NCBI RefSeq assembly: GCF_001194135.2
Contig: NC_069005.1
Span: 21,947,970 to 21,987,054 of the forward strand
Origin: Octopus bimaculoides
Lineage: Eukaryota
DNA length: 39,085 nt
Direction of reading: 5' to 3'
The translations under genes and the position numbers were made by a program. Below the pieces are notes generated by a model, which was given only the letters and a program-made list of their open reading frames with translations, searched no databases and was not told the DNA's origin. Positions 152 to 38,330 of this stretch are shown here, one piece after another (the stretch's first letter is position 1; each line of letters opens with the position of its first letter).

Positions 152-326
152 ATATATATATATATATATAACTGCCTGACAAATAATTATATTTTGCAGG
201 TGCATTGTTTTCATAAAGAATCTCTGCTTCTGTCAGGTCTTCGGAAGCCAATATATTTTGAATCTGCAAATGGATAAAAATTATTTCAGAACGTATATAG
301 GCGCAGGCGTGACTGTGTAGCAAGAA

Positions 327-586
327 GGCGGAGAGCTGGCAGAGTGGTTAGCACACCGGGCCAAATACTTATCGGTATTTTGTCTGCCACTGCGTTCCGA
401 GTTCAAATTCCGCCGAGGTCGACTTTAACTTTCAACCTTTCGGAGTCGATAAATTAAGTACCAGTTACGCACTGGGATCGACTTAATCCCTTTGTCTGTC
501 CTTGTTTGTCCCCTCTATGTTTAGCCCCTTGTGGGCAATAAAGAGATAAGAAACGTTAGCACGCCGGACGAAATGCTTAGCGGTAT
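327..586 (+). mobile_element. tRNA-derived SINE family A (GGCGGCGAGCTGGCAGAA head), followed by a partial restart of the head
   Basis: A-box/B-box-like head (GAGTTCAAATTCC), central block CTTTCA.CCTTTCGGAGTCGATAAATTAAGTACCAG, and tail ending GCAATAAAGAGATAAG. The head restarts at about 551. About 13 related copies or fragments occur in the window. Confidence 0.85.
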
Positions 587-1575: not shown

Positions 1576-1801
1576 TTTACCCTTTCGCATTCAGATTTCT
1601 GTGTCAAATATATTGCTTATTTATTCATATCATTTAGAATTAATCATGCATTATCTTGTAGCTTTGAAATTTCAATGGTATGATATTATATTTTTAGAAT
1701 GACATATTAGAATAAGTGTAAAAGGTTGGATCTGGCCAGTTTTAGCATAAAACGTAGAATATTTGAACCAGATATGGCCGGATTAAATGCTAAAGAGTTA
1801 A
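1576..1801. mobile_element. piggyBac-like MITE
   Basis: Imperfect terminal inverted repeats (ttta-CCCTTTCGCATT ... AATGCTAAAGAG-ttaa), with TTAA on the right and a degenerate TTTA on the left. About 225 bp, non-coding. Confidence 0.6.
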
Positions 1802-2052
1802 AGACTAGGATGGGATTTGAGGTTTGGTTGCTAGTTCGGTCGACCGCGATGTGCCTTCAACAATAGGCTGTTGTTGACATTGTTGTTGTTCTTGCTGCTG
1901 CTGCTGTTGTCTTGCTCCAAGTCAAGCGTGATACAGCATGCTTATGATCACAGGTATTCCAACCTGGACCATCCTGTCAGTTGAGTATTATTAGGAAGCG
2001 AACTGGCAGAATTATTTGGACCTGGGACAAAATGCTTTACAATTTTTTTTTT

Positions 2053-2463
2053 AAAGTAGTTGTATGCTGTCAACTTAATGTGACAGTCCCAAGAAGAGAA
2101 TAACACTACTGCTATTTAGCCCTAGGAAGCAGCACCGCTTCCTGTCGGCCTTGACACATTTCCTGTGTCCTTATGTTTACAAGGGGGAGACAAGCACCAC
2201 CATCCAGCTAAGCTTGCATCCAGAGACATGTTTCTGAGTCTTTGCTCGTCATCAGTCTGGAGTAGCAAAGGTCTGCTAGTTGGGATGCCTGTCAAGCTCT
2301 CGTAAACATATAATAATTCTAGTAAAACACATTCACTGATTTCAAAAAATAGAAATAATACATTTCTAAATCTCTCAGAGAGATTTATGCAGTAGTGATG
2401 CGATAAAGTAGTTATATGCTGTCAACTTAATGTGACAGTCCCAAGAAGAGAATAACACTACTG
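2053..2463 (-). repeat. 352-bp tandem unit carrying a hammerhead ribozyme (retrozyme or PLE pseudo-LTR-like): one full unit plus the start of a second
   Basis: AAAGTAGTT(G/A)TATGCTGTCAACTTAATGTGACAGTCCC... starts at 2053 and again at 2405 (period 352). The second unit runs into an assembly gap. Confidence 0.85.
2219..2261 (-). ncRNA. Type I minimal hammerhead ribozyme motif
   Basis: The minus strand reads UCCAGA CUGAUGA C GAG caaaga CUC A GAAAC AU GUC UCUGGA. This gives stem I UCCAGA/UCUGGA, core CUGAUGA...GAAA, stem II GAG/CUC, a palindromic stem III (ACAUGU) and a GUC cleavage triplet (cut between 2225 and 2224). There is a non-canonical C/A pair at the base of stem II. Confidence 0.75.
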
Positions 2464-2845
2464 NNNNNNNNNNNNNNNNNNNNNNNNNNNNNNNNNNNNN
2501 NNNNNNNNNNNNNNNNNNNNNNNNNNNNNNNNNNNNNNNNNNNNNNNNNNNNNNNNNNNNNNNNNNNNNNNNNNNNNNNNNNNNNNNNNNNNNNNNNNNN
2601 NNNNNNNNNNNNNNNNNNNNNNNNNNNNNNNNNNNNNNNNNNNNNNNNNNNNNNNNNNNNNNNNNNNNNNNNNNNNNNNNNNNNNNNNNNNNNNNNNNNN
2701 NNNNNNNNNNNNNNNNNNNNNNNNNNNNNNNNNNNNNNNNNNNNNNNNNNNNNNNNNNNNNNNNNNNNNNNNNNNNNNNNNNNNNNNNNNNNNNNNNNNN
2801 NNNNNNNNNNNNNNNNNNNNNNNNNNNNNNNNNNNNNNNNNNNNN

Positions 2846-3060
2846 GCTTAGCTAAGTGGGGGTGATTGTCTTCTCCTTGTAAACATAAGGACACAGGAAA
2901 TGTGTCAAGGCCGACAGGAAGCGGTGCAGCTTCCTAGAGCTAAATAGCGGTAGTATTATTCCCTTCATGGGACTGTCACATTAAGTTGACAACATACAAC
3001 TACTTTATCGCATCACTACTGCATAAATCTCTCTGAGAGATTTAAAAATATATTATTTCA
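2846..3060 (+). repeat. Inverted copy of the 352-bp HHR-bearing unit, spanning a unit junction
   Basis: Diverged reverse complement of about 2053-2212, continuing into the reverse complement of about 2350-2404. Its HHR would fall just inside the upstream gap. Confidence 0.85.
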
Positions 3061-3074
3061 ATTTTTTTTTTTTT

Positions 3075-3290
3075 TTCGGTTCTTTACATTCTGGATTCGA
3101 TCTCGCCGAAGCTTACGAAAGTCGACAAAACAAATTAGCAGCCCAAAGCACAGGATTGGTGTAATTGTTAGAGCGATGAACAAATTGCTTTTCAGTATTT
3201 GTTTCGGCTTCTTACGTTCTGGATTGACATCTCACTCAGGCTTCTCGTGGTAGATAAAAGAAAGTACCACTCCAGAATGGTTGACTGGTC
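3075..3290 (+). mobile_element. Degenerate fragments of SINE family A
   Basis: Two decayed head-like segments (TTACATTCTGGATTCGATCTCGCCGA; TTACGTTCTGGATTGACATCTC...GATAAAAGAAAGTACC). Confidence 0.45.
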
Positions 3291-3494
3291 AAAGTATTAA
3301 TATAGCATTAAGTGTATCTTTACAGATTTTTCTATAGAATTTAGAGCCAGCGCTGAAAGTTACGACGTTTCGTATACGAATACTTCTATGTAAATAATGC
3401 GATCGAAGATAGAAAAAATGGGTAATGGGTGTATATGCATATTTCAGGATCTATTGCAATTTCATCAGCCCCACATCCAACTCATTAACCATCC

Positions 3495-4467: not shown

Positions 4468-4570
4468 CGTGGCTATAGTAGAAGACACTTGCCCAAGGTA
4501 CCACGCAGTGGGACTGAACCTGGAACCGTGTGGTTGGTAAGCAAGCTACTTACCACAAAGCCGCTCCTAT
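4468..4570 (-). mobile_element. SINE family B, 5' portion
   Basis: Close match to 790-900; truncated by a gap. Confidence 0.85.
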
Positions 4571-5879: not shown

Positions 5880-7064
5880 TCAATTGGGAGATGTTCGAGG
5901 GCTACTCATGGAAAAACCTCATAAGAAAACATGGGTAACTTGACTTTTGGTGCAGGTTGGAAGAAGTGTACTATAAGGTCTTTACTATAGAAATGAACAG
6001 GTACTTATCTAGTAAAGAGGATTGGATGCTGCGACTTGTGTGCGAGCATGGAAGCAGCAAAAGGTCGCATTCTGTTGTCAAGAAAGCTTATAAATTTGCA
6101 AGAAAACTTGGCAGTAACTCTGAATTAGATGAAAAACCTGAAACCACGGCTGAAAGGCATCAAAACGAATGAAGCAGATTACAAAAAAAAAATGGGGTGG
6201 GGACAAACTGAGGAGCGGTTGAGGCAGAAGTTCCTGCATGGATAATATATTCTTCGAAGTCAGCAACAACCCATCAGTGGCTGAAGAATTCAGAATTAAG
6301 AGTAGAGACTGAAGGCTTCATACTGGTGGTGCAAGATCAAACCAGAAATTACCAGGCTAACGTTCTTCAAAACCGTACTGACCTTAGCCGCAGATTCTGT
6401 AATAAATTTGACGAAACAACAGACCATCTAGTTTCGGGATGTCTTGTGCTGATAGCAAACAAATACAAAAATCCACGATAGTGTAGGACAGTATTTACAT
6501 TGGAAAATATGTAAACACTTAAAAAACCACTCCTGCTAACTGGTATGGACATCATACTGAACCAGTTATTGAAAGTAAAAATGCTACCATCCTCTGGGAT
6601 TTTCCAGTCAACACTGTCAGAATGATCCAGGATAATCGACTAGACATAATCATTAAAGAGAGGGAAAAAAATACTTGTAGGTTAATAGATTTCAGTGTTT
6701 TCACTGATAAAAATCTGTAGAGGAATATCTGTAAAGGAATTTATTAAATGCAAGGACCTGGAAATAGAAATACAAAAGATGTGGCATCTTCAATCAAAAA
6801 CTGTTCCTGTTATTGTAGGTGTCGTAGGTATGATAAAAAAAAAAGGGATGTCAGACAAAATTTAGACAACATCCCAGGAGAGCCATGTCTTAAAGAAATC
6901 CAAAAGATTGTGCAGACATGTACTGCCCATATCTTTTGAAAAACCCTAGCAATTTAAATATTTGTGTTGCGTTATATGGAGGTATTTCTCTACTGCCCTC
7001 GCAACTCCCCCCCCCCACCACCACCACTAAGCTTTCAGTTATAGTTCAACATCCCTTAACCTTC
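5880..7064 (+). mobile_element. RLE-type non-LTR retrotransposon (R4/Dong-like), decayed 3' part of the ORF plus 3' UTR
   Basis: Frameshifted motifs THQWLKNSELRVETEGFILVVQDQ; decayed zinc knuckle (RRFCNKFDETTDHLVSGC); YLHWKICKH; ILWDFPVNT..NRLDIII..CRLIDFSV; KDLEIEIQKMWHL; VPVIVGVVG; LKEIQKIV. These cover the zinc knuckle and the PD-(D/E)xK nuclease. Confidence 0.85.
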
Positions 7065-8257: not shown

Positions 8258-8467
8258 GATTTCAAGTTTTTGCAACAAGGGCAGCTTGCGGGAGGGGGTT
8301 AAATCGATTACATCAACTTCAGTGCGTAACTGGTACTTATTTAATCCACCCCGAAATCGTGAAAGGCAAAGACACCCTCGGTGGAATTTGAACTCAGAAC
8401 ATAACGACACAAAATACCGATAAGCACTTCGCCCGGCGTGCTACCGATTCTGCCAGCTCACCGCCTT
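8258..8467 (-). mobile_element. SINE family A
   Basis: Head, central block and tail (..TTGCAAAAACTTGAAA); flanked by (AAC/AAT)n. Confidence 0.85.
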
Positions 8468-8493
8468 AATAATAATAATAATAATAATAATAA

Positions 8494-8707
8494 TCCTTTC
8501 CATTATAAGCACAAGGCCTGAAATTTGGGGGAAGGGGGATAGTCGATTATATTGACCCCAGTGTTTCACTGGTACTTAATTCATCGACCCCGAAAGGATG
8601 AAAGACAAAGTCGATCTCGGCGGAGTTTGAACTCAGAACGCAGCGACAGGCGAAAAACCGCTAAGATTTTCGTCCAGCGTGCTAACGATACTACTAGCTC
8701 GCTGCCT
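8494..8707 (-). mobile_element. SINE family A
   Basis: Full head and central block, tail GGCCTTGTGCTTATAATGGAAAGGA; flanked by (AAT)n on both sides. Confidence 0.85.
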
Positions 8708-8713
8708 TAATTA

Positions 8714-8786
<73 letters not shown>

Positions 8787-11227: not shown

Positions 11228-11427
11228 AATATTGGTTTCAAATTTTGGCACAAGGCCAGCAATTTTGGAGTAGGGGTTAAGTCGATTATATCAACCCCAG
11301 TGTTCAACTTGTACGTTATTTTGTCGATCCCGAAAGGACGAAATGCGTAGTCGACCTCGGCGGAACTTGAACTCAGAATGTAGCGACGGTCGAAATGCCG
11401 CTAAGTATCCTGCCACCTCGCTGCCTT
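11228..11427 (-). mobile_element. SINE family A
   Basis: Head with an internal deletion, central block, tail GGCCTTGTGCCAAAATTTGAAACC. Confidence 0.8.
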
Positions 11428-11590
11428 CTATGTTCAGGATAATCTTAATCCTAAGTGTAGTTGACCATGGTAGACCATGGTAGACCTGGGGTTAAATAAT
11501 TACAATAACAATGACAAGAATCGTAGGCAGAATATTGAAGAAAACAGATGCAGCAAGTGTAACAATTATAGTAAAGGATCACCTTATCTC

Positions 11591-12292: not shown

Positions 12293-12499
12293 AATAATGG
12301 TTTCAGATTTTGGTACAAGGCCAGGTTCAAGGGAGGGGCTAAGTTGATTATATCAACACGAGTATTCTATTTTATCGACCTCGAAAAGATGAGAGGCAAA
12401 ATGAACCCCGGCAGAATTTGAACTCAGAACGTAAAGACGGACGAAATGCAACTAAACATCTTTCCAGGCGTGCTAAGGATTCTGCCAGCTCACCGTCTT
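12293..12499 (-). mobile_element. SINE family A
   Basis: Head, central block and tail. Confidence 0.8.
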
Positions 12500-12521
12500 A
12501 GTAATAATAATAATAATAATA

Positions 12522-12645: not shown

Positions 12646-13859
12646 GACGCACATATGCACATACAGAGACATGCACATATACACACATGAATACACACAC
12701 ATGCACACACACACACACATGTATAGAGTGCTTGAAGTGGCGTACAGATACTGCATATTAAGAAAATGGAGGCAGTCAGAATTTTGGAGAATTCTTTACT
12801 AACGCTTTCGTTCGTTCAATCAAACTCTTCAAGATATTAATGTACAGAAGATTTCATCCCCCTTTTATGTAAATCGAAAAGGGGGAGTTGTTTTGTTTAA
12901 AAGGGAAATTCTGTTTGGGGGGAAAGCTAGTAAGAGGGGGGATAGGAAGAAGGACAATAAAGAAAGAGAAAGAAAAGCAAAGAAAAGTGGAAGAGAGACA
13001 TAGAGAAAGAGGCTTCTTTTCAATTGTAATTGAATCGATGTGGTTAACCCATTGAAATTTAATTACAATTCAAGTGTTTTCGAAAGCATCTCTTTCTCTC
13101 TCCCTCTTCTTCTCTCTTTATATACATATTAGCATGTTTGTAACTATAACATATATGTGTGTGTGTATGTTGTTTTGTTTTGAATAGGAGAAAGAGAAAA
13201 GAGGTAGGAAGGGAGGAGAGGAGGAGGGAGTAGAGAAGGCGTGTATTTTGGGATACTCTGTGCTAAATGAACTTTTAAGTTGTCAATTTTAGGAAAAAGG
13301 ATAAGAAAGAAAAAGAGAGAAAGAAGAAAAATGAAAGGGAAAGACAGAGAAAGAGAGAAGCTTCTTTTCAATTATATTGTGTCGATGTGATCAACTTGTT
13401 AAAATTTAATTACAATTCAAGATATCATTCTTGATTCAGTTATTGTTTTTGAAAGTCCCTTATCATATACATCTCTTTTACTCTTTTATTCTTTTATTCG
13501 TTTACTTGTTGAAATCACAACCTTACAATTGGGAGCCGATTACCCTCACCACTAAGCCTTCACACCTAATGACCAATTTGTAACGGGCATATTACGGCCG
13601 GAGCTACATACGTCATACACATTGTGAACACTTTACAATCGGAAATAACTCGAGAAGCAGAGGTACCTGCTACCATTACTCCTGATACTATGAATCATAC
13701 AGAAGAGATGTCCCATATTTCGTGTTTCTGAAGAATTAGGAAAGCGATATCCTCTCCAAATATCATGCAGAATGAGTCAGTTATCGAGCGGAAATTGCTT
13801 GGAGGAGGCCATTCTGGAGTAGGTATTTATCCCACGACTTCCTACTAATGTATAACTAA

Positions 13860-14430
13860 TATTAGTCTCCATGAAATATCATTTTCCCGTTACACAGCTA
13901 GATGAGTTGGCGAATACGATAGCGGAGATATATTACCTCAAATCTGCTCCAACCATTAGTAGAGCTACAATACATGCCTTCAATAAAACTTGAAGTGACA
14001 GCGACCAGAGTAGATGCCAACGATTTGAGACAGCATGTTCCTTGGGTTTTTGTCGTCAATATGTAATAGCAGATTCAAACGCAAATATGCTAGTCTCTTT
14101 CGTGTTCGTCACAGGAAAATAGCTCGTCCGCTTTGACGACCATATGTTCGTACCACGCTCGATGCATTAGTACAAGGGATTTTGGTGCACCTATCTTTCA
14201 ACATGTTGTGTTTTATCAGTCAGAAATATCCGAACTAATAAATCTAAACAGGAGACGATGGGCTTGCTTATAATTTCAGCGAATAAATTGTTGGCTGGTC
14301 TGTACTGATATCTACTAACTGCAATTCATTATGCACTATCGGTCGCTTCCTGTTAGATTCATTTGTCCAAGTGTGCTTCTGCCTGACGAGACAGAAGCAT
14401 GTCGGAACACCGGTGTCCCAGATTACCCTG
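13860..14430 (+). mobile_element. Possible highly decayed Penelope-like element (GIY-YIG region) ending in an HHR
   Basis: Broken motifs DILP...SN..Y..C, then LRQHVP, SSAL..DH and FISQKYPN resemble the PLE endonuclease C-terminus. Many stops and frameshifts; the neighbouring HHR motif adds support. Confidence 0.35.
14378..14422 (+). ncRNA. Degenerate type I minimal hammerhead motif
   Basis: UCUGc CUGACGA GAC agaagcau GUC GgAAC ACCGGU GUC cCAGA. Stem II GAC/GUC, palindromic stem III (ACACCGGUGU), GUC triplet, stem I UCUG/CAGA. Two defects: A13 to G, and a C-C mismatch at pair 1.1. Confidence 0.65.
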
Positions 14431-20265: not shown

Positions 20266-21867
20266 GGGATTATATATATATATGTCACTGTATCGATCAG
20301 ACTATCAGATGTTGTTATACATTGCTGCTCACAGTGCGCTTGCAATTCTTTCTTGATTGCGCCATTTTTTCCATCTTGATCCAAATCGTGTAATGACCTT
20401 AAGACTTGATCCGGTTGTTGTGTCAAGGCCGTTATATCGTGTCGTTATGATGGAGTTGACTGTGACGTGGAAAATGAGGATGATGAGAAGAGAGAGAGAG
20501 AGAGAGGAATAGGAGGTAGAGAGAAACTAGGAGACAGGTAGAAAGGAGGGAGCCTATGCAGTGTTAGTAGAAGAATGCAAATGAAATGGAAGTGAGGAAG
20601 AGCTGTGGGCGGTAGGAATCGGGTGCAAGGGTTTTGTAGGGCTCTCTGTTACAAAGTGGATTCAGGCTTTTAGTGTAGTTGGACGTCAGGTGAAAGGATG
20701 GTTGAGGCTGATTTGTTAGCAGAGAATTCGGCAAGCAGCACCGGAGGAAGTACTTATCAAACACGAATTTGGCCATTGTCACTCTGTAACTTCTGTCTAT
20801 TATTAATGTGTGTGTGTGTGTGTGTATATATATNNNNNNNNNNNNNNNNNNNNNNNNNNNNNNNNNNNNNNNNNNNNNNNNNNNNNNNNNNNNNNNNNNN
20901 NNNNNNNNNNNNNNNNNNNNNNNNNNNNNNNNNNNNNNNNNNNNNNNNNNNNNNNNNNNNNNNNNNNNNNNNNNNNNNNNNNNNNNNNNNNNNNNNNNNN
21001 NNNNNNNNNNNNNNNNNNNNNNNNNNNNNNNNNNNNNNNNNNNNNNNNNNNNNNNNNNNNNNNNNNNNNNNNNNNNNNNNNNNNNNNNNNNNNNNNNNNN
21101 NNNNNNNNNNNNNNNNNNNNNNNNNNNNNNNNNNNNNNNNNNNNNNNNNNNNNNNNNNNNNNNNNNNNNNNNNNNNNNNNNNNNNNNNNNNNNNNNNNNN
21201 NNNNNNNNNNNNNNNNNNNNNNNNNNNNNNNNNNNNNNNNNNNNNNNNNNNNNNNNNNNNNNNNNNNNNNNNNNNNNNNNNNNNNNNNNNNNNNNNNNNN
21301 NNNNNNNNNNNNNNNNNNNNNNNNNNNNNNNNNNNNNNNNNNNNNNNNNNNNNNNNNNNNNNNNNNNNNNNNNNNNNNNNNNNNNNNNNNNNNNNNNNNN
21401 NNNNNNNNNNNNNNNNNNNNNNNNNNNNNNNNNNNNNNNNNNNNNNNNNNNNNNNNNNNNNNNNNNNNNNNNNNNNNNNNNNNNNNNNNNNNNNNNNNNN
21501 NNNNNNNNNNNNNNNNNNNNNNNNNNNNNNNNNNNNNNNNNNNNNNNNNNNNNNNNNNNNNNNNNNNNNNNNNNNNNNNNNNNNNNNNNNNNNNNNNNNN
21601 NNNNNNNNNNNNNNNNNNNNNNNNNNNNNNNNNNNNNNNNNNNNNNNNNNNNNNNNNNNNNNNNNNNNNNNNNNNNNNNNNNNNNNNNNNNNTTTGTCAA
21701 AAACGTTAAGAGTAAACCCTGTTCTACGTGACACATTCTACCAGTATCCGAAGTTTCAAAGTGTTTAGTTTTAAAAAAATGAATTAAAAAAATCTGTGCA
21801 TGAGATGGAACAGATCCCAATTTTGCCAGCTCACCACCTTCTCCCGCTGTTGGTATATTTATTGAAT

Positions 21868-22088
21868 AAGGCGCGAGCTGACAGAATCGTTAGCACGCCG
21901 GGCAAAATGCTTAGTGGTATTTCGTCTGCCGTTATGTTATGAGTTCAAATTCCGCCGAGGTCGACTTTGCTTTTCATCCTTTTGGGGTCGATAAATTAAG
22001 TACCAGTGAAGCACTGGCGTCGATGTAATCGACTTAATTTCCATCCCCTAAGTTTGAAGCATTTTGCTTCCAGTAGAAAGGATATTAT
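21868..22088 (+). mobile_element. SINE family A, near full length
   Basis: Head, B box GAGTTCAAATTCC, central block, tail ..CAGTAGAAAGGATATT. Confidence 0.85.
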
Positions 22089-35463: not shown

Positions 35464-36209
35464 AAAGGAGATTGCCACAAAGTACCTGGTGAACAAGAGA
35501 GACAGTGACGCTCTTGCAATCCCAAGGTGCAACCGCATGTGTAGACTGTCATGTGTAGGACGACATCACGCATGTGATTAACAGCTGTCCTAAAATGTCG
35601 TCCCAGTACTACCTCCCTATGCTGCACGGTGTTATTGCCAAAACAATTTACAATGCCCTCCGCAAAAAAGAGTCCTGAAATAAACTGAGAAAATCCCCCT
35701 GTTATGGAATACATTCATAAACACCAACTCAAGGAATATTGGTGGAATATTCCTATCAAATCTTCTGTCGAATGTAAACATAACAGGCCGGATATTGTTC
35801 TTTGGGACAGAGAGGCAAAGGCGTGTACCATCAAAGAGGTCAGCTGTCCTGCAGATATAAATATCTCTTTGAAAATCAAAGACAAAGAGGATATCTATGG
35901 ACAACTGCTTCGAAAACTCCAGCTTCTATATCCAGACTATGAATTCATATTCATACCAATAATAATTGGAGTACTTGGGTTTGTTAGTAAATGCTTAAAG
36001 GAGAATCTGGATAAACTGGGATTTTCAGAAAGAGAAATCGACTGGCTAATTCGTATATTACAAGTGCAATCTGTGAGTGGAACAGTAAAAATATGCAAGA
36101 CTTTTCTCAAGTTCCAAATGTGAATTTGTCTGTGTTAACTACATCCCAAAGATGGAGCCTTGTATCTTTGTTGGAAATCGGCTCCCTCCTTAGTGGAAAA
36201 TTTATAATA
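35464..36209 (+). mobile_element. RLE-type non-LTR retrotransposon, second family, 3' part
   Basis: EIATKYLVNKRD; frameshifted CCHC knuckle CRL.H..DDITHVINSC (35540-35588); open frame 35704-36123 with NRPDIVLWD...IKEVSCP...K.DKEDIY...IPIIIGVLG (PD-(D/E)xK nuclease). Confidence 0.9.
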
Positions 36210-37144: not shown

Positions 37145-37481
37145 ACAGTCCAAATGTAATATCAACAAATTTCTCAATAGTTCGCCAAAAAATGTCTTCT
37201 TTATCTTTTTATCTTTAACGCATTAACTTTTGATGACCATCTAATTTCTTTTACGGTGCACATTTTCTCGCTCTCTCTTTCTCTGCTTTTCTCCCCACCC
37301 TTGCTCTCTCAGAGCATTATGTTCAGTCTGTTGTATCGACTCTTAACAAAAGTCTTCATAGGAACGTTCAACCAGTTTTCTTTCATATTATAAGGTTCAA
37401 CTTACCAAGACTTTCCTGTTCCTTTCCGTGTTGTGCGTCATGCAGACAGACAGCCAGGATCTTGTTTCCATTCCATTCTTT

Positions 37482-38330
37482 AATGTCGGCGAGCTGGCAG
37501 AAACGTTAGCGCGTCGGGCGAAATGCTTAGCGATATTTCGTCTGCCGTTACGTTCTGAGATCAAATTCCGCCGAGATCGTCTTTGCCTTTCATCCTTTCG
37601 GGGTCGATAAATTAAGTACCAGTTACGCACTAGGGTTGATCNNNNNNNNNNNNNNNNNNNNNNNNNNNNNNNNNNNNNNNNNNNNNNNNNNNNNNNNNNN
37701 NNNNNNNNNNNNNNNNNNNNNNNNNNNNNNNNNNNNNNNNNNNNNNNNNNNNNNNNNNNNNNNNNNNNNNNNNNNNNNNNNNNNNNNNNNNNNNNNNNNN
37801 NNNNNNNNNNNNNNNNNNNNNNNNNNNNNNNNNNNNNNNNNNNNNNNNNNNNNNNNNNNNNNNNNNNNNNNNNNNNNNNNNNNNNNNNNNNNNNNNNNNN
37901 NNNNNNNNNNNNNNNNNNNNNNNNNNNNNNNNNNNNNNNNNNNNNNNNNNNNNNNNNNNNNNNNNNNNNNNNNNNNNNNNNNNNNNNNNNNNNNNNNNNN
38001 NNNNNNNNNNNNNNNNNNNNNNNNNNNNNCTTTGCCTTTCATCCTTTCGGGGTCGATAAATTAAGTACCAGTTACGCACTGGGGTCGATGTAATCGACTT
38101 AATCCCCTTGTCCGTCTTTGTTTGTCCCTTCTATGTTTAGCCCCTTGAGGGCAATAAAGAAATAGGTATTTCGTCTGCCGTTACGTTCTGAGATCAAATT
38201 CCGCCGAGGTCGTCTTTGCCTTTCATCCTTTCGGGGTCGATAAATTAAGTACCAGTTACGCACTAGGGTTGATCTAATCGACTGGGCCCGTCCCCCAAAT
38301 TTTTCGGGCCTTGTTCCTAGAGTAGAAAAA
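37482..38330 (+). mobile_element. Multimeric SINE family A (head and central block, gap, central block with tail 1, internal restart, central block with tail 2)
   Basis: 37539-37641 is nearly identical to 38171-38275; the restart GTATTTCGTCTGCCG follows directly after the tail GCAATAAAGAAATAG. Confidence 0.85.

What the first reader, a model, noticed from the sequence alone, without database searches (positions are those of the whole stretch)
2053..2463. Hammerhead-ribozyme tandem repeat: candidate retrozyme or circular-RNA element in a probable cephalopod
Seen: a 352-bp unit (starts at 2053 and 2405) whose minus strand contains a type I hammerhead with a 6-bp stem I, a CUGAUGA...GAAA core, a GUC cut site and a tiny palindromic stem III (ACAUGU). 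No ORF is evident in the unit. Established: minimal type I HHRs with a palindromic helix III self-cleave as dimers, and occur in Penelope-like pseudo-LTRs and in animal non-LTR retrozymes, whose tandem transcripts are cut to unit length and circularised. Inference: minus-strand transcription of this array would give 352-nt monomers or circRNAs, mobilised in trans by a PLE reverse transcriptase. I do not recall such a family being described in cephalopods, but cannot check. Caveat: the base of stem II is C/A in this copy.
Basis: partly seen in the sequence, partly recalled or inferred. Interest (0 to 1): 0.85.

Follow-up and report, generated by a model that had tools for sequence, protein, structure and literature searches.

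The report
Hammerhead-ribozyme retrozyme insertion inside a SINE
This is an old copy of a small non-coding mobile element, a "retrozyme" whose RNA carries a self-cutting hammerhead ribozyme, inserted into another repeat; it is a new example of a known kind, not a new kind of system.

Summary
A 352-bp unit (2053-2404) restarts at 2405, and its minus strand carries a complete type I hammerhead with the cut after C2225. A generic descriptor finds only this site in the window (2 hits in 1000 shuffles). A covariance model built from known type I hammerheads ranks it first (23.4 bits, E about 4e-5). Rfam's own Hammerhead_1 model does not report it.

It is the canonical metazoan hammerhead, not a minimal Penelope-type one. 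It has a 6-bp helix I, the UAC/U internal loop, loop 2 CAAAGA, and a one-pair helix III capped by palindromic CAUG.

- Only 1.17 units and one ribozyme are visible before an assembly gap (2464-2845).
- An inverted arm of the same element lies at 2846-3067.
- The whole block is an insertion in a tRNA-type SINE copy, flanked by T9 runs.

Unit size, 41% G+C, a strongly self-paired RNA (z = -5.9), no coding capacity and head-to-head arms fit an animal non-LTR retrozyme inserted by Penelope-like machinery. This copy looks decayed: the arms are 92% identical and the base of helix II is a C/A mismatch. Cleavage, circular RNA and copy number could not be tested.

The parts
1992..2042 (+). 5' half of the host tRNA-type SINE copy (left flank of the insertion)
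   Evidence: The joined flanks align collinearly with 8 other SINE copies of the window across the junction.
2043..2051 (.). Left T9 run, putative target-site duplication
   Evidence: There are nine T before the first unit-derived base. T2052 matches the T that precedes the second unit. This is low-complexity sequence, so the call is tentative.
2053..2404 (-). One complete 352-bp retrozyme unit. The ribozyme (sense) strand is the minus strand.
   Evidence: 352-bp period. G+C is 41%. The sense RNA folds at -117.7 kcal/mol against -87.5 +/- 5.1 for shuffles, z = -5.9, with 60% of bases paired.
2213..2269 (-). Canonical type I hammerhead with peripheral elements. Closing stem UUUGC 2269-2265 pairs with GCAAG 2217-2213. 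Loop 1 is UAC 2264-2262 and U 2218. Helix I is 2261-2256 with 2224-2219. Core CUGAUGA is 2255-2249. Helix II is C2248 GAG 2247-2245 with CUC 2238-2236 A2235. Loop 2 CAAAGA is 2244-2239. GAA is 2234-2232. A15.1 is 2231, the palindromic loop CAUG is 2230-2227 and U16.1 is 2226. C17 is 2225, and the predicted cut is between 2225 and 2224.
   Evidence: Architecture compared with the Rfam RF00163 consensus and with the Schistosoma-derived N79 sequence.
2405..2463 (-). Last 59 nt (in sense direction) of the neighbouring unit, cut off by the gap. It shows one head-to-tail unit junction at 2404/2405.
   Evidence: 98% identical to 2053-2111.
2464..2845 (.). Assembly gap (382 N). It hides the 5' parts of both arms, and any further ribozyme copies if the arms continue into it.
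2846..3067 (+). Inverted arm of the same element, with the sense strand on plus. It starts 11 nt after the cleavage position, runs through a unit junction (3006/3007) and ends in the unit's own U6 run (3062-3067).
   Evidence: Gapless 222-nt alignment to a tandem model of the unit, with 17 mismatches (92.3% identity; 12 transitions, 5 transversions).
3068..3076 (.). Right T9 run, putative target-site duplication
   Evidence: The right T run is 15 T, of which 6 are unit-derived and 9 are extra. This matches the 9 flanking T on the left.
3077..3142 (+). 3' half of the host SINE copy (right flank)
   Evidence: Collinear continuation of the SINE alignment.

Best explanation
The block 2053-3067 is one old insertion of a small non-autonomous, non-coding retroelement of the animal 'non-LTR retrozyme' type.

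Shown by the sequence:
- The repeating unit is 352 bp.
- Its sense strand carries a canonical type I hammerhead ribozyme.
- Helix III of the ribozyme is only one A-U pair capped by the palindromic tetraloop CAUG.

Inferred life cycle of the family, from the anatomy and from published work on such elements:
1. An array is transcribed as a multimer.
2. Ribozymes of neighbouring units pair through ACAUGU into a double hammerhead and cut after GUC (position 2225 here). This releases 352-nt monomers.
3. The strongly self-paired monomer brings its ends together through helix I and is ligated into a circular RNA.
4. A Penelope-like reverse transcriptase/endonuclease supplied in trans copies the circular or multimeric RNA at a nicked T/A run.
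5. More-than-unit copying gives head-to-tail units. Priming from both sides of the break gives two arms whose 5' ends face each other, flanked by a duplicated T9.

This particular copy sits in a SINE. Its arms have diverged by about 8% and it has a C/A mismatch at the base of helix II. It is most likely a decaying relic rather than an active source locus.
For: Ribozyme:
- Descriptor: 1 hit in the window against 2 in 1000 shuffles.
- Independent covariance model: top hit, 23.4 bits, E about 4e-5.
- Architecture matches the Rfam type I consensus aUccag-CUGAcGA-GUCC-CAAAUA-GGAC-GAA-ACGcgCGU-C-cuggAu.
- It also matches the Schistosoma-derived N79 ribozyme GCAGG-UAC-AUCCAG-CUGAUGA-GUCC-CAAAUA-GGAC-GAAAC...GUC-CUGGAU-U-CCACUGC. 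Shared features are the UAC/U internal loop, a 6-bp helix I, 4 helix II positions and 5 of 6 loop 2 bases.
- Cervera and de la Pena 2014 describe canonical metazoan hammerheads as helix I 6 bp, helix II 4 bp and helix III 1-2 bp with a small palindromic loop that acts as a dimer.
- The double-hammerhead pairing is energetically near-optimal: -20.2 against a dimer minimum of -21.0 kcal/mol.

Retrozyme features listed in PMC7229834:
- Unit of 150-450 bp: 352 bp here.
- G+C below 45-50%: 41% here.
- Highly self-paired RNA: z = -5.9.
- No LTR or ORF.
- Target-site duplication longer than 4 bp: T9 here.
- Head-to-tail junctions are seen twice (2404/2405 and 3006/3007).

Discrete insertion: the joined flanks reconstitute a SINE copy collinear with 8 other copies. 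This also validates the scaffold orientation.

Penelope link:
- Partial tandems plus an adjacent inverted copy, and a bias for microsatellite targets, are the published Penelope-like insertion pattern (PMC8557442).
- Retrozymes are argued to be non-autonomous Penelope derivatives (bioRxiv 10.64898/2026.07.22.740005).
- Penelope families are reported as recently active in Octopus vulgaris (PMC13282606).

A mismatch at the base of helix II does not preclude cleavage. The axolotl HHR_Amex2 has a U/U mismatch there and cleaves, efficiently so as a dimer.
Against: - Rfam RF00163 does not report the site, even at E<=10 on 81 nt.
- The highly conserved G10.1-C11.1 pair is replaced by C/A.
- Only one ribozyme and 1.17 + 0.63 units are visible. 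The rest is an assembly gap whose size is only an estimate.
- No other copy exists in the 39-kb window. None was found in the collections I could scan, but these hold essentially no animal genomes. So there is no family consensus, no covariation and no copy number.
- The duplicated site is a T run, which is weak evidence for a duplication.
- No reverse transcriptase or GIY-YIG ORF is in the window.
- Transcription, cleavage and circularisation are untested.
Confidence: 0.78

Rival explanations
1. The units are the pseudo-LTR or terminal region of an autonomous Penelope-like element. Its reverse transcriptase/endonuclease ORF is hidden in, or was lost from, the gap.
For: Hammerheads with a palindromic helix III occur in Penelope pseudo-LTRs. 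Tandem-plus-inverted structures are typical of these elements, and they break short-read assemblies. The gap content is unknown.
Against: The repeat period is 352 bp, with direct unit-to-unit junctions seen twice. An autonomous element would repeat with a period of several kb. Metazoan Penelope hammerheads are described as minimal, with helix II 7-8 bp, helix I 4-5 bp and no defined loop 1. This one is the canonical loop-bearing type, which is associated with retrozymes. The estimated gap of 382 bp is too small for an ORF. No RT or GIY-YIG signal was found in the window.
Confidence: 0.1
2. This is a short block of ordinary satellite DNA that happens to carry a hammerhead. It was amplified locally by DNA-level processes and is not mobile.
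For: Type I hammerheads were first described in 'satellite' repeats of newts and schistosomes. No second locus is available to show transposition.
Against: The block interrupts a SINE copy cleanly and is flanked by equal T9 runs. The right arm ends exactly at the unit's own U6, next to the target T run, as expected for primed reverse transcription. The classical hammerhead satellites have themselves been reinterpreted as retrozymes.
Confidence: 0.07
3. The hammerhead resemblance is a chance match, or the inverted arrangement is a scaffolding artefact.
For: Rfam does not report the site. The window is a draft scaffold with 21 gaps. With the relaxed descriptor, 0.002 chance hits per window would still give on the order of a hundred hits in a genome of a few gigabases.
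Against: The site also carries features that the descriptor did not ask for. These are the UAC/U loop 1, the CAAAGA loop 2, a 5-bp closing stem, and its location in a 352-bp repeat with a strongly self-paired RNA. The two contigs on either side of the gap carry the two halves of one SINE in the same orientation. A wrong join or a wrong orientation would not give that.
Confidence: 0.03

Closest known systems
Animal non-LTR retrozymes (Cervera and de la Pena 2020, PMC7229834: coral, mussel, axolotl)
   Same: A type I hammerhead in head-to-tail units of a few hundred bp. Low G+C, non-coding, strongly self-paired RNA. Target duplications longer than 4 bp. Coexistence with Penelope-like elements.
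   Different: Only one ribozyme and under two units per arm are visible here. The two arms lie head to head. Helix II has a C/A mismatch at its base. The host is apparently a cephalopod. No expression or copy-number data are available.
Newt satellite 2 / axolotl HHR_Amex1 retrozymes (330-350 bp units)
   Same: Nearly the same unit size. Helix III is reduced to one base pair capped by a palindromic tetraloop. Loop 1 / loop 2 elements are present. Efficient cleavage is therefore expected only as a dimer.
   Different: Different unit sequence and host. Those families have tens of thousands of copies and proven circular RNAs. Neither is known here.
Schistosoma mansoni Sm-alpha hammerhead (parent of N79) and Rfam Hammerhead_1 (RF00163)
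   Same: Same order and size of elements: closing stem, UAC, 6-bp helix I, CUGAUGA, 4-nt helix II strands, CAAA(U/G)A loop, GAAAC, GUC, and a U bulge.
   Different: The helix II sequence differs (CGAG/CUCA against GUCC/GGAC), with a mismatch at 10.1/11.1. Helix III is 2 nt shorter than the Rfam consensus. The score is below anything Rfam reports.
Minimal hammerheads in pseudo-LTRs of Penelope-like elements (Cervera and de la Pena 2014, PMC4209133)
   Same: Palindromic helix III, a dimeric mode of action, and tandem/inverted insertion architecture.
   Different: The metazoan Penelope-type motifs described there have a long helix II (7-8 bp), a short helix I (4-5 bp), an extra unpaired base before helix II and no defined loop 1. 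They flank a reverse transcriptase/GIY-YIG ORF, which is absent here.
Plant LTR retrozymes (PMC4918200)
   Same: Non-autonomous retroelements that make hammerhead-processed circular RNAs.
   Different: Plant elements have type III hammerheads inside LTRs, a primer-binding site and polypurine tract, a 600-1000 nt size, higher G+C, 4-bp duplications, and mobilisation by LTR retrotransposons.

Membership tests
Hammerhead ribozyme, type I | Conserved core CUGANGA ... GAAA, with a U-H cleavage dinucleotide after helix III | tested here: met
   CUGAUGA 2255-2249, GAAA 2234-2231, U16.1 2226, C17 2225.
Hammerhead ribozyme, type I | Three helices around the core, with helix I open (5' and 3' ends in helix I) | tested here: met
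   Helix I is 6 bp, UCCAGA/UCUGGA. Helix II is GAG/CUC. Helix III is A-U plus the palindromic CAUG.
Hammerhead ribozyme, type I | G10.1-C11.1 pair at the base of helix II | tested here: not met
   C2248 lies opposite A2235. A natural precedent for a mismatch at this position that still cleaves is the axolotl HHR_Amex2 (U/U).
Hammerhead ribozyme, type I | Match to the curated Rfam model RF00163 at its gathering score (34 bits) | tested here: not met
   No match at gathering. None at E<=10 on 1.5 kb or on 81 nt.
Hammerhead ribozyme, type I | Significant match to a sequence-plus-structure model built from known members only | tested here: met
   Model R1 was built from the Rfam consensus, N79 and two database copies. 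Its top hit in the window is 2261..2219(-): 23.4 bits, rough E 3.9e-5, full length.
Hammerhead ribozyme, type I | Loop 1 / loop 2 elements of canonical metazoan motifs (tertiary contacts) | tested here: met
   UAC/U internal loop and CAAAGA loop 2, against UAC/U and CAAAUA in N79 and Rfam. This is met by sequence comparison only. The contacts themselves were not tested.
Hammerhead ribozyme, type I | Self-cleavage at the predicted site | not testable with these tools
   Needs in vitro transcription of monomer and dimer constructs.
Animal non-LTR retrozyme | Type I hammerhead inside head-to-tail repeats (dimers to multimers) of 150-450 bp | tested here: inconclusive
   The unit is 352 bp and two head-to-tail junctions are seen. 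Only 1.17 and 0.63 units and one ribozyme are visible. The rest is a gap.
Animal non-LTR retrozyme | Low G+C (below 45-50%), no LTR, primer-binding site, polypurine tract or ORF | tested here: met
   G+C is 41%. The only long open frame has no family match and no homologue.
Animal non-LTR retrozyme | Unit RNA is highly self-paired | tested here: met
   -117.7 kcal/mol against -87.5 +/- 5.1 for shuffles, z = -5.9. 60-62% of bases are paired in the linear or circular fold.
Animal non-LTR retrozyme | Many dispersed genomic copies, with species-specific families | not testable with these tools
   No other copy in the window. The collections available hold no animal genomes. Scans found nothing.
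Animal non-LTR retrozyme | Expression as unit-length linear and circular RNA | not testable with these tools
   No transcriptome data are available.
Penelope-like element (autonomous) | ORF with a reverse transcriptase and a GIY-YIG endonuclease between pseudo-LTRs | tested here: not met
   There is no such ORF in the visible element. None of the 10 most complex open frames of the window hit RT or GIY-YIG families. The gap content is unknown.
Penelope-like element (insertion signature) | Partial tandem copies with an adjacent inverted copy, and insertion into simple repeats | tested here: met
   Head-to-head arms, each containing a unit junction, inserted at a T run in a SINE. Pattern as described in PMC8557442.

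The most novel reading that the evidence does not exclude
The C10.1/A11.1 mismatch may be a conserved feature of a live, undescribed cephalopod retrozyme family rather than decay. An A opposite C inside a long, strongly paired RNA is the kind of site that I recall (from memory, not checked here) being favoured for adenosine-to-inosine editing, and the same recollection is that such editing is extensive in coleoid cephalopods. Editing A2235 would create an I-C pair at the base of helix II. Self-cleavage and circle formation would then depend on RNA editing. Nothing here tests this. It rests on one genomic copy and on general knowledge.
Probability: 0.03. Interest if true: 0.8.

Novelty: new member of a known kind. 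Interest (0 to 1): 0.3.

Why it matters
If the family is confirmed genome-wide, it would extend hammerhead retrozymes to cephalopods. Until now only unexamined Rfam 'hammerhead 1' counts have been published for a cephalopod.

This locus also gives a clean view of how such an element lands: a discrete insertion in a SINE, two arms with facing 5' ends, one arm ending at the unit's own U run next to a T-run target, and a 9-nt duplication. That anatomy fits the recent proposal that animal retrozymes are mobilised by Penelope-like elements.

For genome annotation it shows two things. Canonical hammerheads with a divergent helix II can fall below Rfam's model. Such elements also sit at contig breaks in short-read assemblies.

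Tried and rejected
1. Rfam at gathering score on the whole window, and at E<=10 on 1800-3300 and on 2205-2285. No hammerhead was reported, only chance-level snoRNA and other matches.
2. Searches for relatives all found nothing. These were a protein search with the 99-codon frame of the unit, two metagenome scans and three viral-contig scans. These collections are essentially free of animal genomes, so the result says little.
3. A scan of prokaryotic genome contigs with the canonical loop pattern gave three hits. One lies inside a probable coding region and looks like chance. Two lie in one contig of a MAG labelled Nitrospirales. They served only to display the Rfam consensus.
4. Organism identification failed. 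I tried homologues of the ORF at 35704-36123, their contigs and their cluster members, and none carried a name. The cephalopod origin therefore remains unverified. The abundant tRNA-type SINE resembles octopus SINEs only from my memory.
5. A hammerhead-like core at 24963-24997(+) fails the descriptor (no helix I or III) and is rejected.
6. I asked whether the second model hit at 14377-14423 belongs to a 347-bp array starting at 12943. Only one 132-nt repeat pair exists and it does not reach the motif.
7. The CAA before the right T run was considered as part of the duplication. It aligns better as the unit's own CUA with one mismatch, so I kept T9 only.
8. Poly(A)-tail reading of the A run next to the left arm: rejected, because the same run appears as T on the sense strand of the other arm. 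That fits a duplicated target.

Full report
**What is there.** The window is a draft eukaryotic scaffold with 21 runs of N.
- At 2052-2111 and 2404-2463 there is a direct repeat with a spacing of 352 bp and 98% identity.
- The second copy stops after 59 nt at a 382-N gap (2464-2845). Tandem Repeats Finder did not report the repeat.
- Beyond the gap, 2846-3067 is the same element in inverted orientation. It aligns without gaps over 222 nt to a tandem model of the unit, with 17 mismatches (92.3% identity), and runs through a unit-to-unit junction at 3006/3007.
- No other copy of the unit is in the window.

**The ribozyme.** The minus strand 2269..2213 reads UUUGC-UAC-UCCAGA-CUGAUGA-C-GAG-CAAAGA-CUC-A-GAA-A-CAUG-U-C / UCUGGA-U-GCAAG. 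C17 is at 2225.
- A generic type I descriptor finds this and no other site on both strands. It found 2 hits in 1000 dinucleotide shuffles of the whole window.
- That rate alone would still allow on the order of a hundred chance hits in a genome of a few gigabases, so I looked for features the descriptor does not require.
- The Rfam type I consensus, seen in an alignment to an unrelated database sequence, is aUccag-CUGAcGA-GUCC-CAAAUA-GGAC-GAA-ACGcgCGU-C-cuggAu.
- The Schistosoma-derived N79 ribozyme printed in PMC12550524 is GCAGG-UAC-AUCCAG-CUGAUGA-GUCC-CAAAUA-GGAC-GAAAC...GUC-CUGGAU-U-CCACUGC.
- The window sequence has the same 6-bp helix I, the same UAC/U internal loop followed by a 5-bp closing stem, 4 positions per helix II strand, and loop 2 CAAAGA against CAAAUA.
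- A covariance model built only from those known sequences ranks 2261..2219(-) first in the window. The score is 23.4 bits with a rough E of 3.9e-5, over the full model length, with filters off.

**What speaks against it.** Rfam's own model gives nothing at its gathering score. It also gives nothing at E<=10, whether 1.5 kb or only 81 nt is searched. The likely reasons are the divergent helix II, the C/A mismatch at 10.1/11.1 and a helix III that is 2 nt shorter than the consensus.

**Which kind of hammerhead.** Cervera and de la Pena (PMC4209133) separate two kinds.
- Canonical metazoan type I motifs have helix I of 6 bp and helix II of 4 bp with interacting loops. Helix III is 1-2 bp with a small palindromic loop, and the ribozyme is active as a dimer in tandem transcripts.
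- The minimal motifs of metazoan Penelope-like elements have helix II of 7-8 bp, helix I of 4-5 bp and a poorly defined loop 1.

The present motif is of the first kind. Its helix III is one A-U pair capped by the palindromic tetraloop CAUG. That is how the newt and axolotl HHR_Amex1 ribozymes are described: they cleave poorly as monomers (6% in 1 h) and efficiently as dimers. The double-hammerhead pairing of two copies through ACAUGU has an energy of -20.2 kcal/mol, close to the unconstrained dimer minimum of -21.0. The G10.1-C11.1 pair is called highly conserved. Here it is C/A. The axolotl HHR_Amex2 family has a U/U mismatch at the same place and still cleaves, so the mismatch lowers the odds of activity but does not exclude it.

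**The unit as a whole.**
- G+C is 41%.
- The 352-nt sense RNA, permuted to start at the cleavage site, folds at -117.7 kcal/mol against -87.5 +/- 5.1 for shuffles (z = -5.9). The antisense strand gives z = -4.5. About 60% of bases are paired.
- In that fold, helix I continues into a long-range stem that joins the two ends of the monomer.
- The unit has a 99-codon stop-free frame on the minus strand, with no Pfam match and no homologue in the large protein collection. With a unit length of 3n+1, the frame cannot continue through an array.

These are the properties listed for animal non-LTR retrozymes: units of 150-450 bp, low G+C, no LTR, primer-binding site or polypurine tract, highly self-paired circular RNAs of about 170-400 nt, and target duplications longer than 4 bp (PMC7229834).

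**The locus is a discrete insertion.**
- The window holds many copies of a tRNA-type SINE.
- When the left flank (to 2052) and the right flank (from 3068) are joined, they align collinearly with eight other SINE copies straight across the junction.
- The element therefore interrupts one SINE copy. The two contigs on either side of the gap belong together in the orientation given, which argues against a scaffolding artefact.
- The left flank ends in nine T (2043-2051) before the first unit base.
- The right arm ends in the unit's own U6 (3062-3067), followed by nine further T (3068-3076). I read this as a 9-nt target duplication, with the caveat that a T run is weak evidence.
- The sense strands of both arms point outward, so their 5' ends face each other in the gap.

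Partial tandems with an adjacent inverted copy, insertion into simple repeats, and resulting breaks in short-read assemblies are the published signature of Penelope-like elements (PMC8557442). I infer the following. A Penelope-type enzyme nicked the T/A run. The A-run 3' end annealed to the U6 of a multimeric or circular template and primed one arm. The other strand primed the second arm.

**Partner elements and prior knowledge.**
- No reverse transcriptase or GIY-YIG frame is in the window, so any mobilisation was in trans.
- Penelope families are reported as recently active in Octopus vulgaris (PMC13282606).
- For cephalopods I found no description of retrozymes. The giant squid genome paper does list 235 Rfam 'hammerhead 1' loci (PMC6962438).
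- Retrozymes are characterised in another mollusc, the mussel.
- I could not verify that the window is cephalopod.

**State of this copy.** The two arms differ at 7.7% of positions, while the two neighbouring units of the left arm differ at 1 of 59. Either the insertion is old, or the template was heterogeneous. Together with the C/A mismatch and the host SINE, I consider this locus a relic rather than a source of RNA. The family, if it exists in many copies, may still be active elsewhere.

**Verdict.** The best reading is a retrozyme-type insertion with a canonical type I hammerhead, made by Penelope-like machinery. I rate it a new member of a known kind and of modest interest. What is missing is everything that needs the rest of the genome or RNA: copy number, consensus and covariation, the content of the gap, cleavage and circles.

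Noticed in passing
window 14377-14423 (+): Second-best hit of the type I hammerhead model (14.9 bits, rough E 0.026): UUCUGC-CUGACGA-GACA-GAAGCA-UGUC-GGAA-CACCGGUG-U-C-CCAGAU. It has a perfect 4-bp helix II with G10.1-C11.1, a 10-nt palindromic helix III and GUC. But GAAA is GGAA and helix I has two mismatches. It may be a decayed hammerhead of another family. It is not in a visible repeat.
   Followed up: partly
window 2270-2264 with 2246-2240 (minus strand): CUUUGCU upstream of the ribozyme is perfectly complementary to AGCAAAG, which spans helix II and loop 2. It is also complementary to GCAAG after the cleavage site. The same strand can therefore either close helix I (compatible with the active fold) or disrupt helix II. 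This may be a conformational switch or a coincidence.
   Followed up: no
window 300-500(+), 8290-8480(-), 8530-8720(-), 11270-11460(-), 12320-12510(-), 21850-22040(+), 37460-37641(+), 38095-38290(+), 3140-3300(+): Many copies of one tRNA-type SINE (…GTTCAAATTCCGCCGAGGTCGAC…GGGGTCGATAAATTAAGTACCAGT…), often next to (AAT)n runs. From memory they resemble octopus SINEs. This was not verified.
   Followed up: partly
window 35704-36123 (+) and 6212-6478 (+): A 139-aa ORF with 36 unnamed homologues (up to 76% identity) on contigs of up to several Mb. It has no Pfam domain. From memory it looks like the C-terminal part of a non-LTR retrotransposon protein. A related fragment lies at 6212-6478.
   Followed up: partly
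window 28682-28927 (-): An 82-aa open frame with a weak match to a helicase family (PF02689, E 8.5e-4, below the curated cut-off). It may be a Helitron or Pif1-type helicase remnant.
   Followed up: no
window 27939-28197: A 42-bp minisatellite with 6.2 copies and 91% matches. It lies inside a 146-aa open frame (27824-28264) that reads through it as a 14-residue repeat (approximately HTSTTAYRYLQQYT).
   Followed up: no
window 12943-13074 and 13290-13421; also 796-896 and 4468-4568: Two unexplained direct repeat pairs: 132 nt at 79% identity with an offset of 347 bp, and 101 nt at 89% identity 3.7 kb apart. The second pair lies next to gaps.
   Followed up: partly
L003 1799-1843 and L005 3147-3191 (contig CBDBCZ010000018.1, labelled Nitrospirales MAG): Two copies of a type I hammerhead-like motif (Rfam Hammerhead_1, 27.2 bits, below the gathering score of 34). 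They sit in DNA that looks eukaryotic, with microsatellites and low G+C stretches. This may be host contamination or a mis-binned contig.
   Followed up: no
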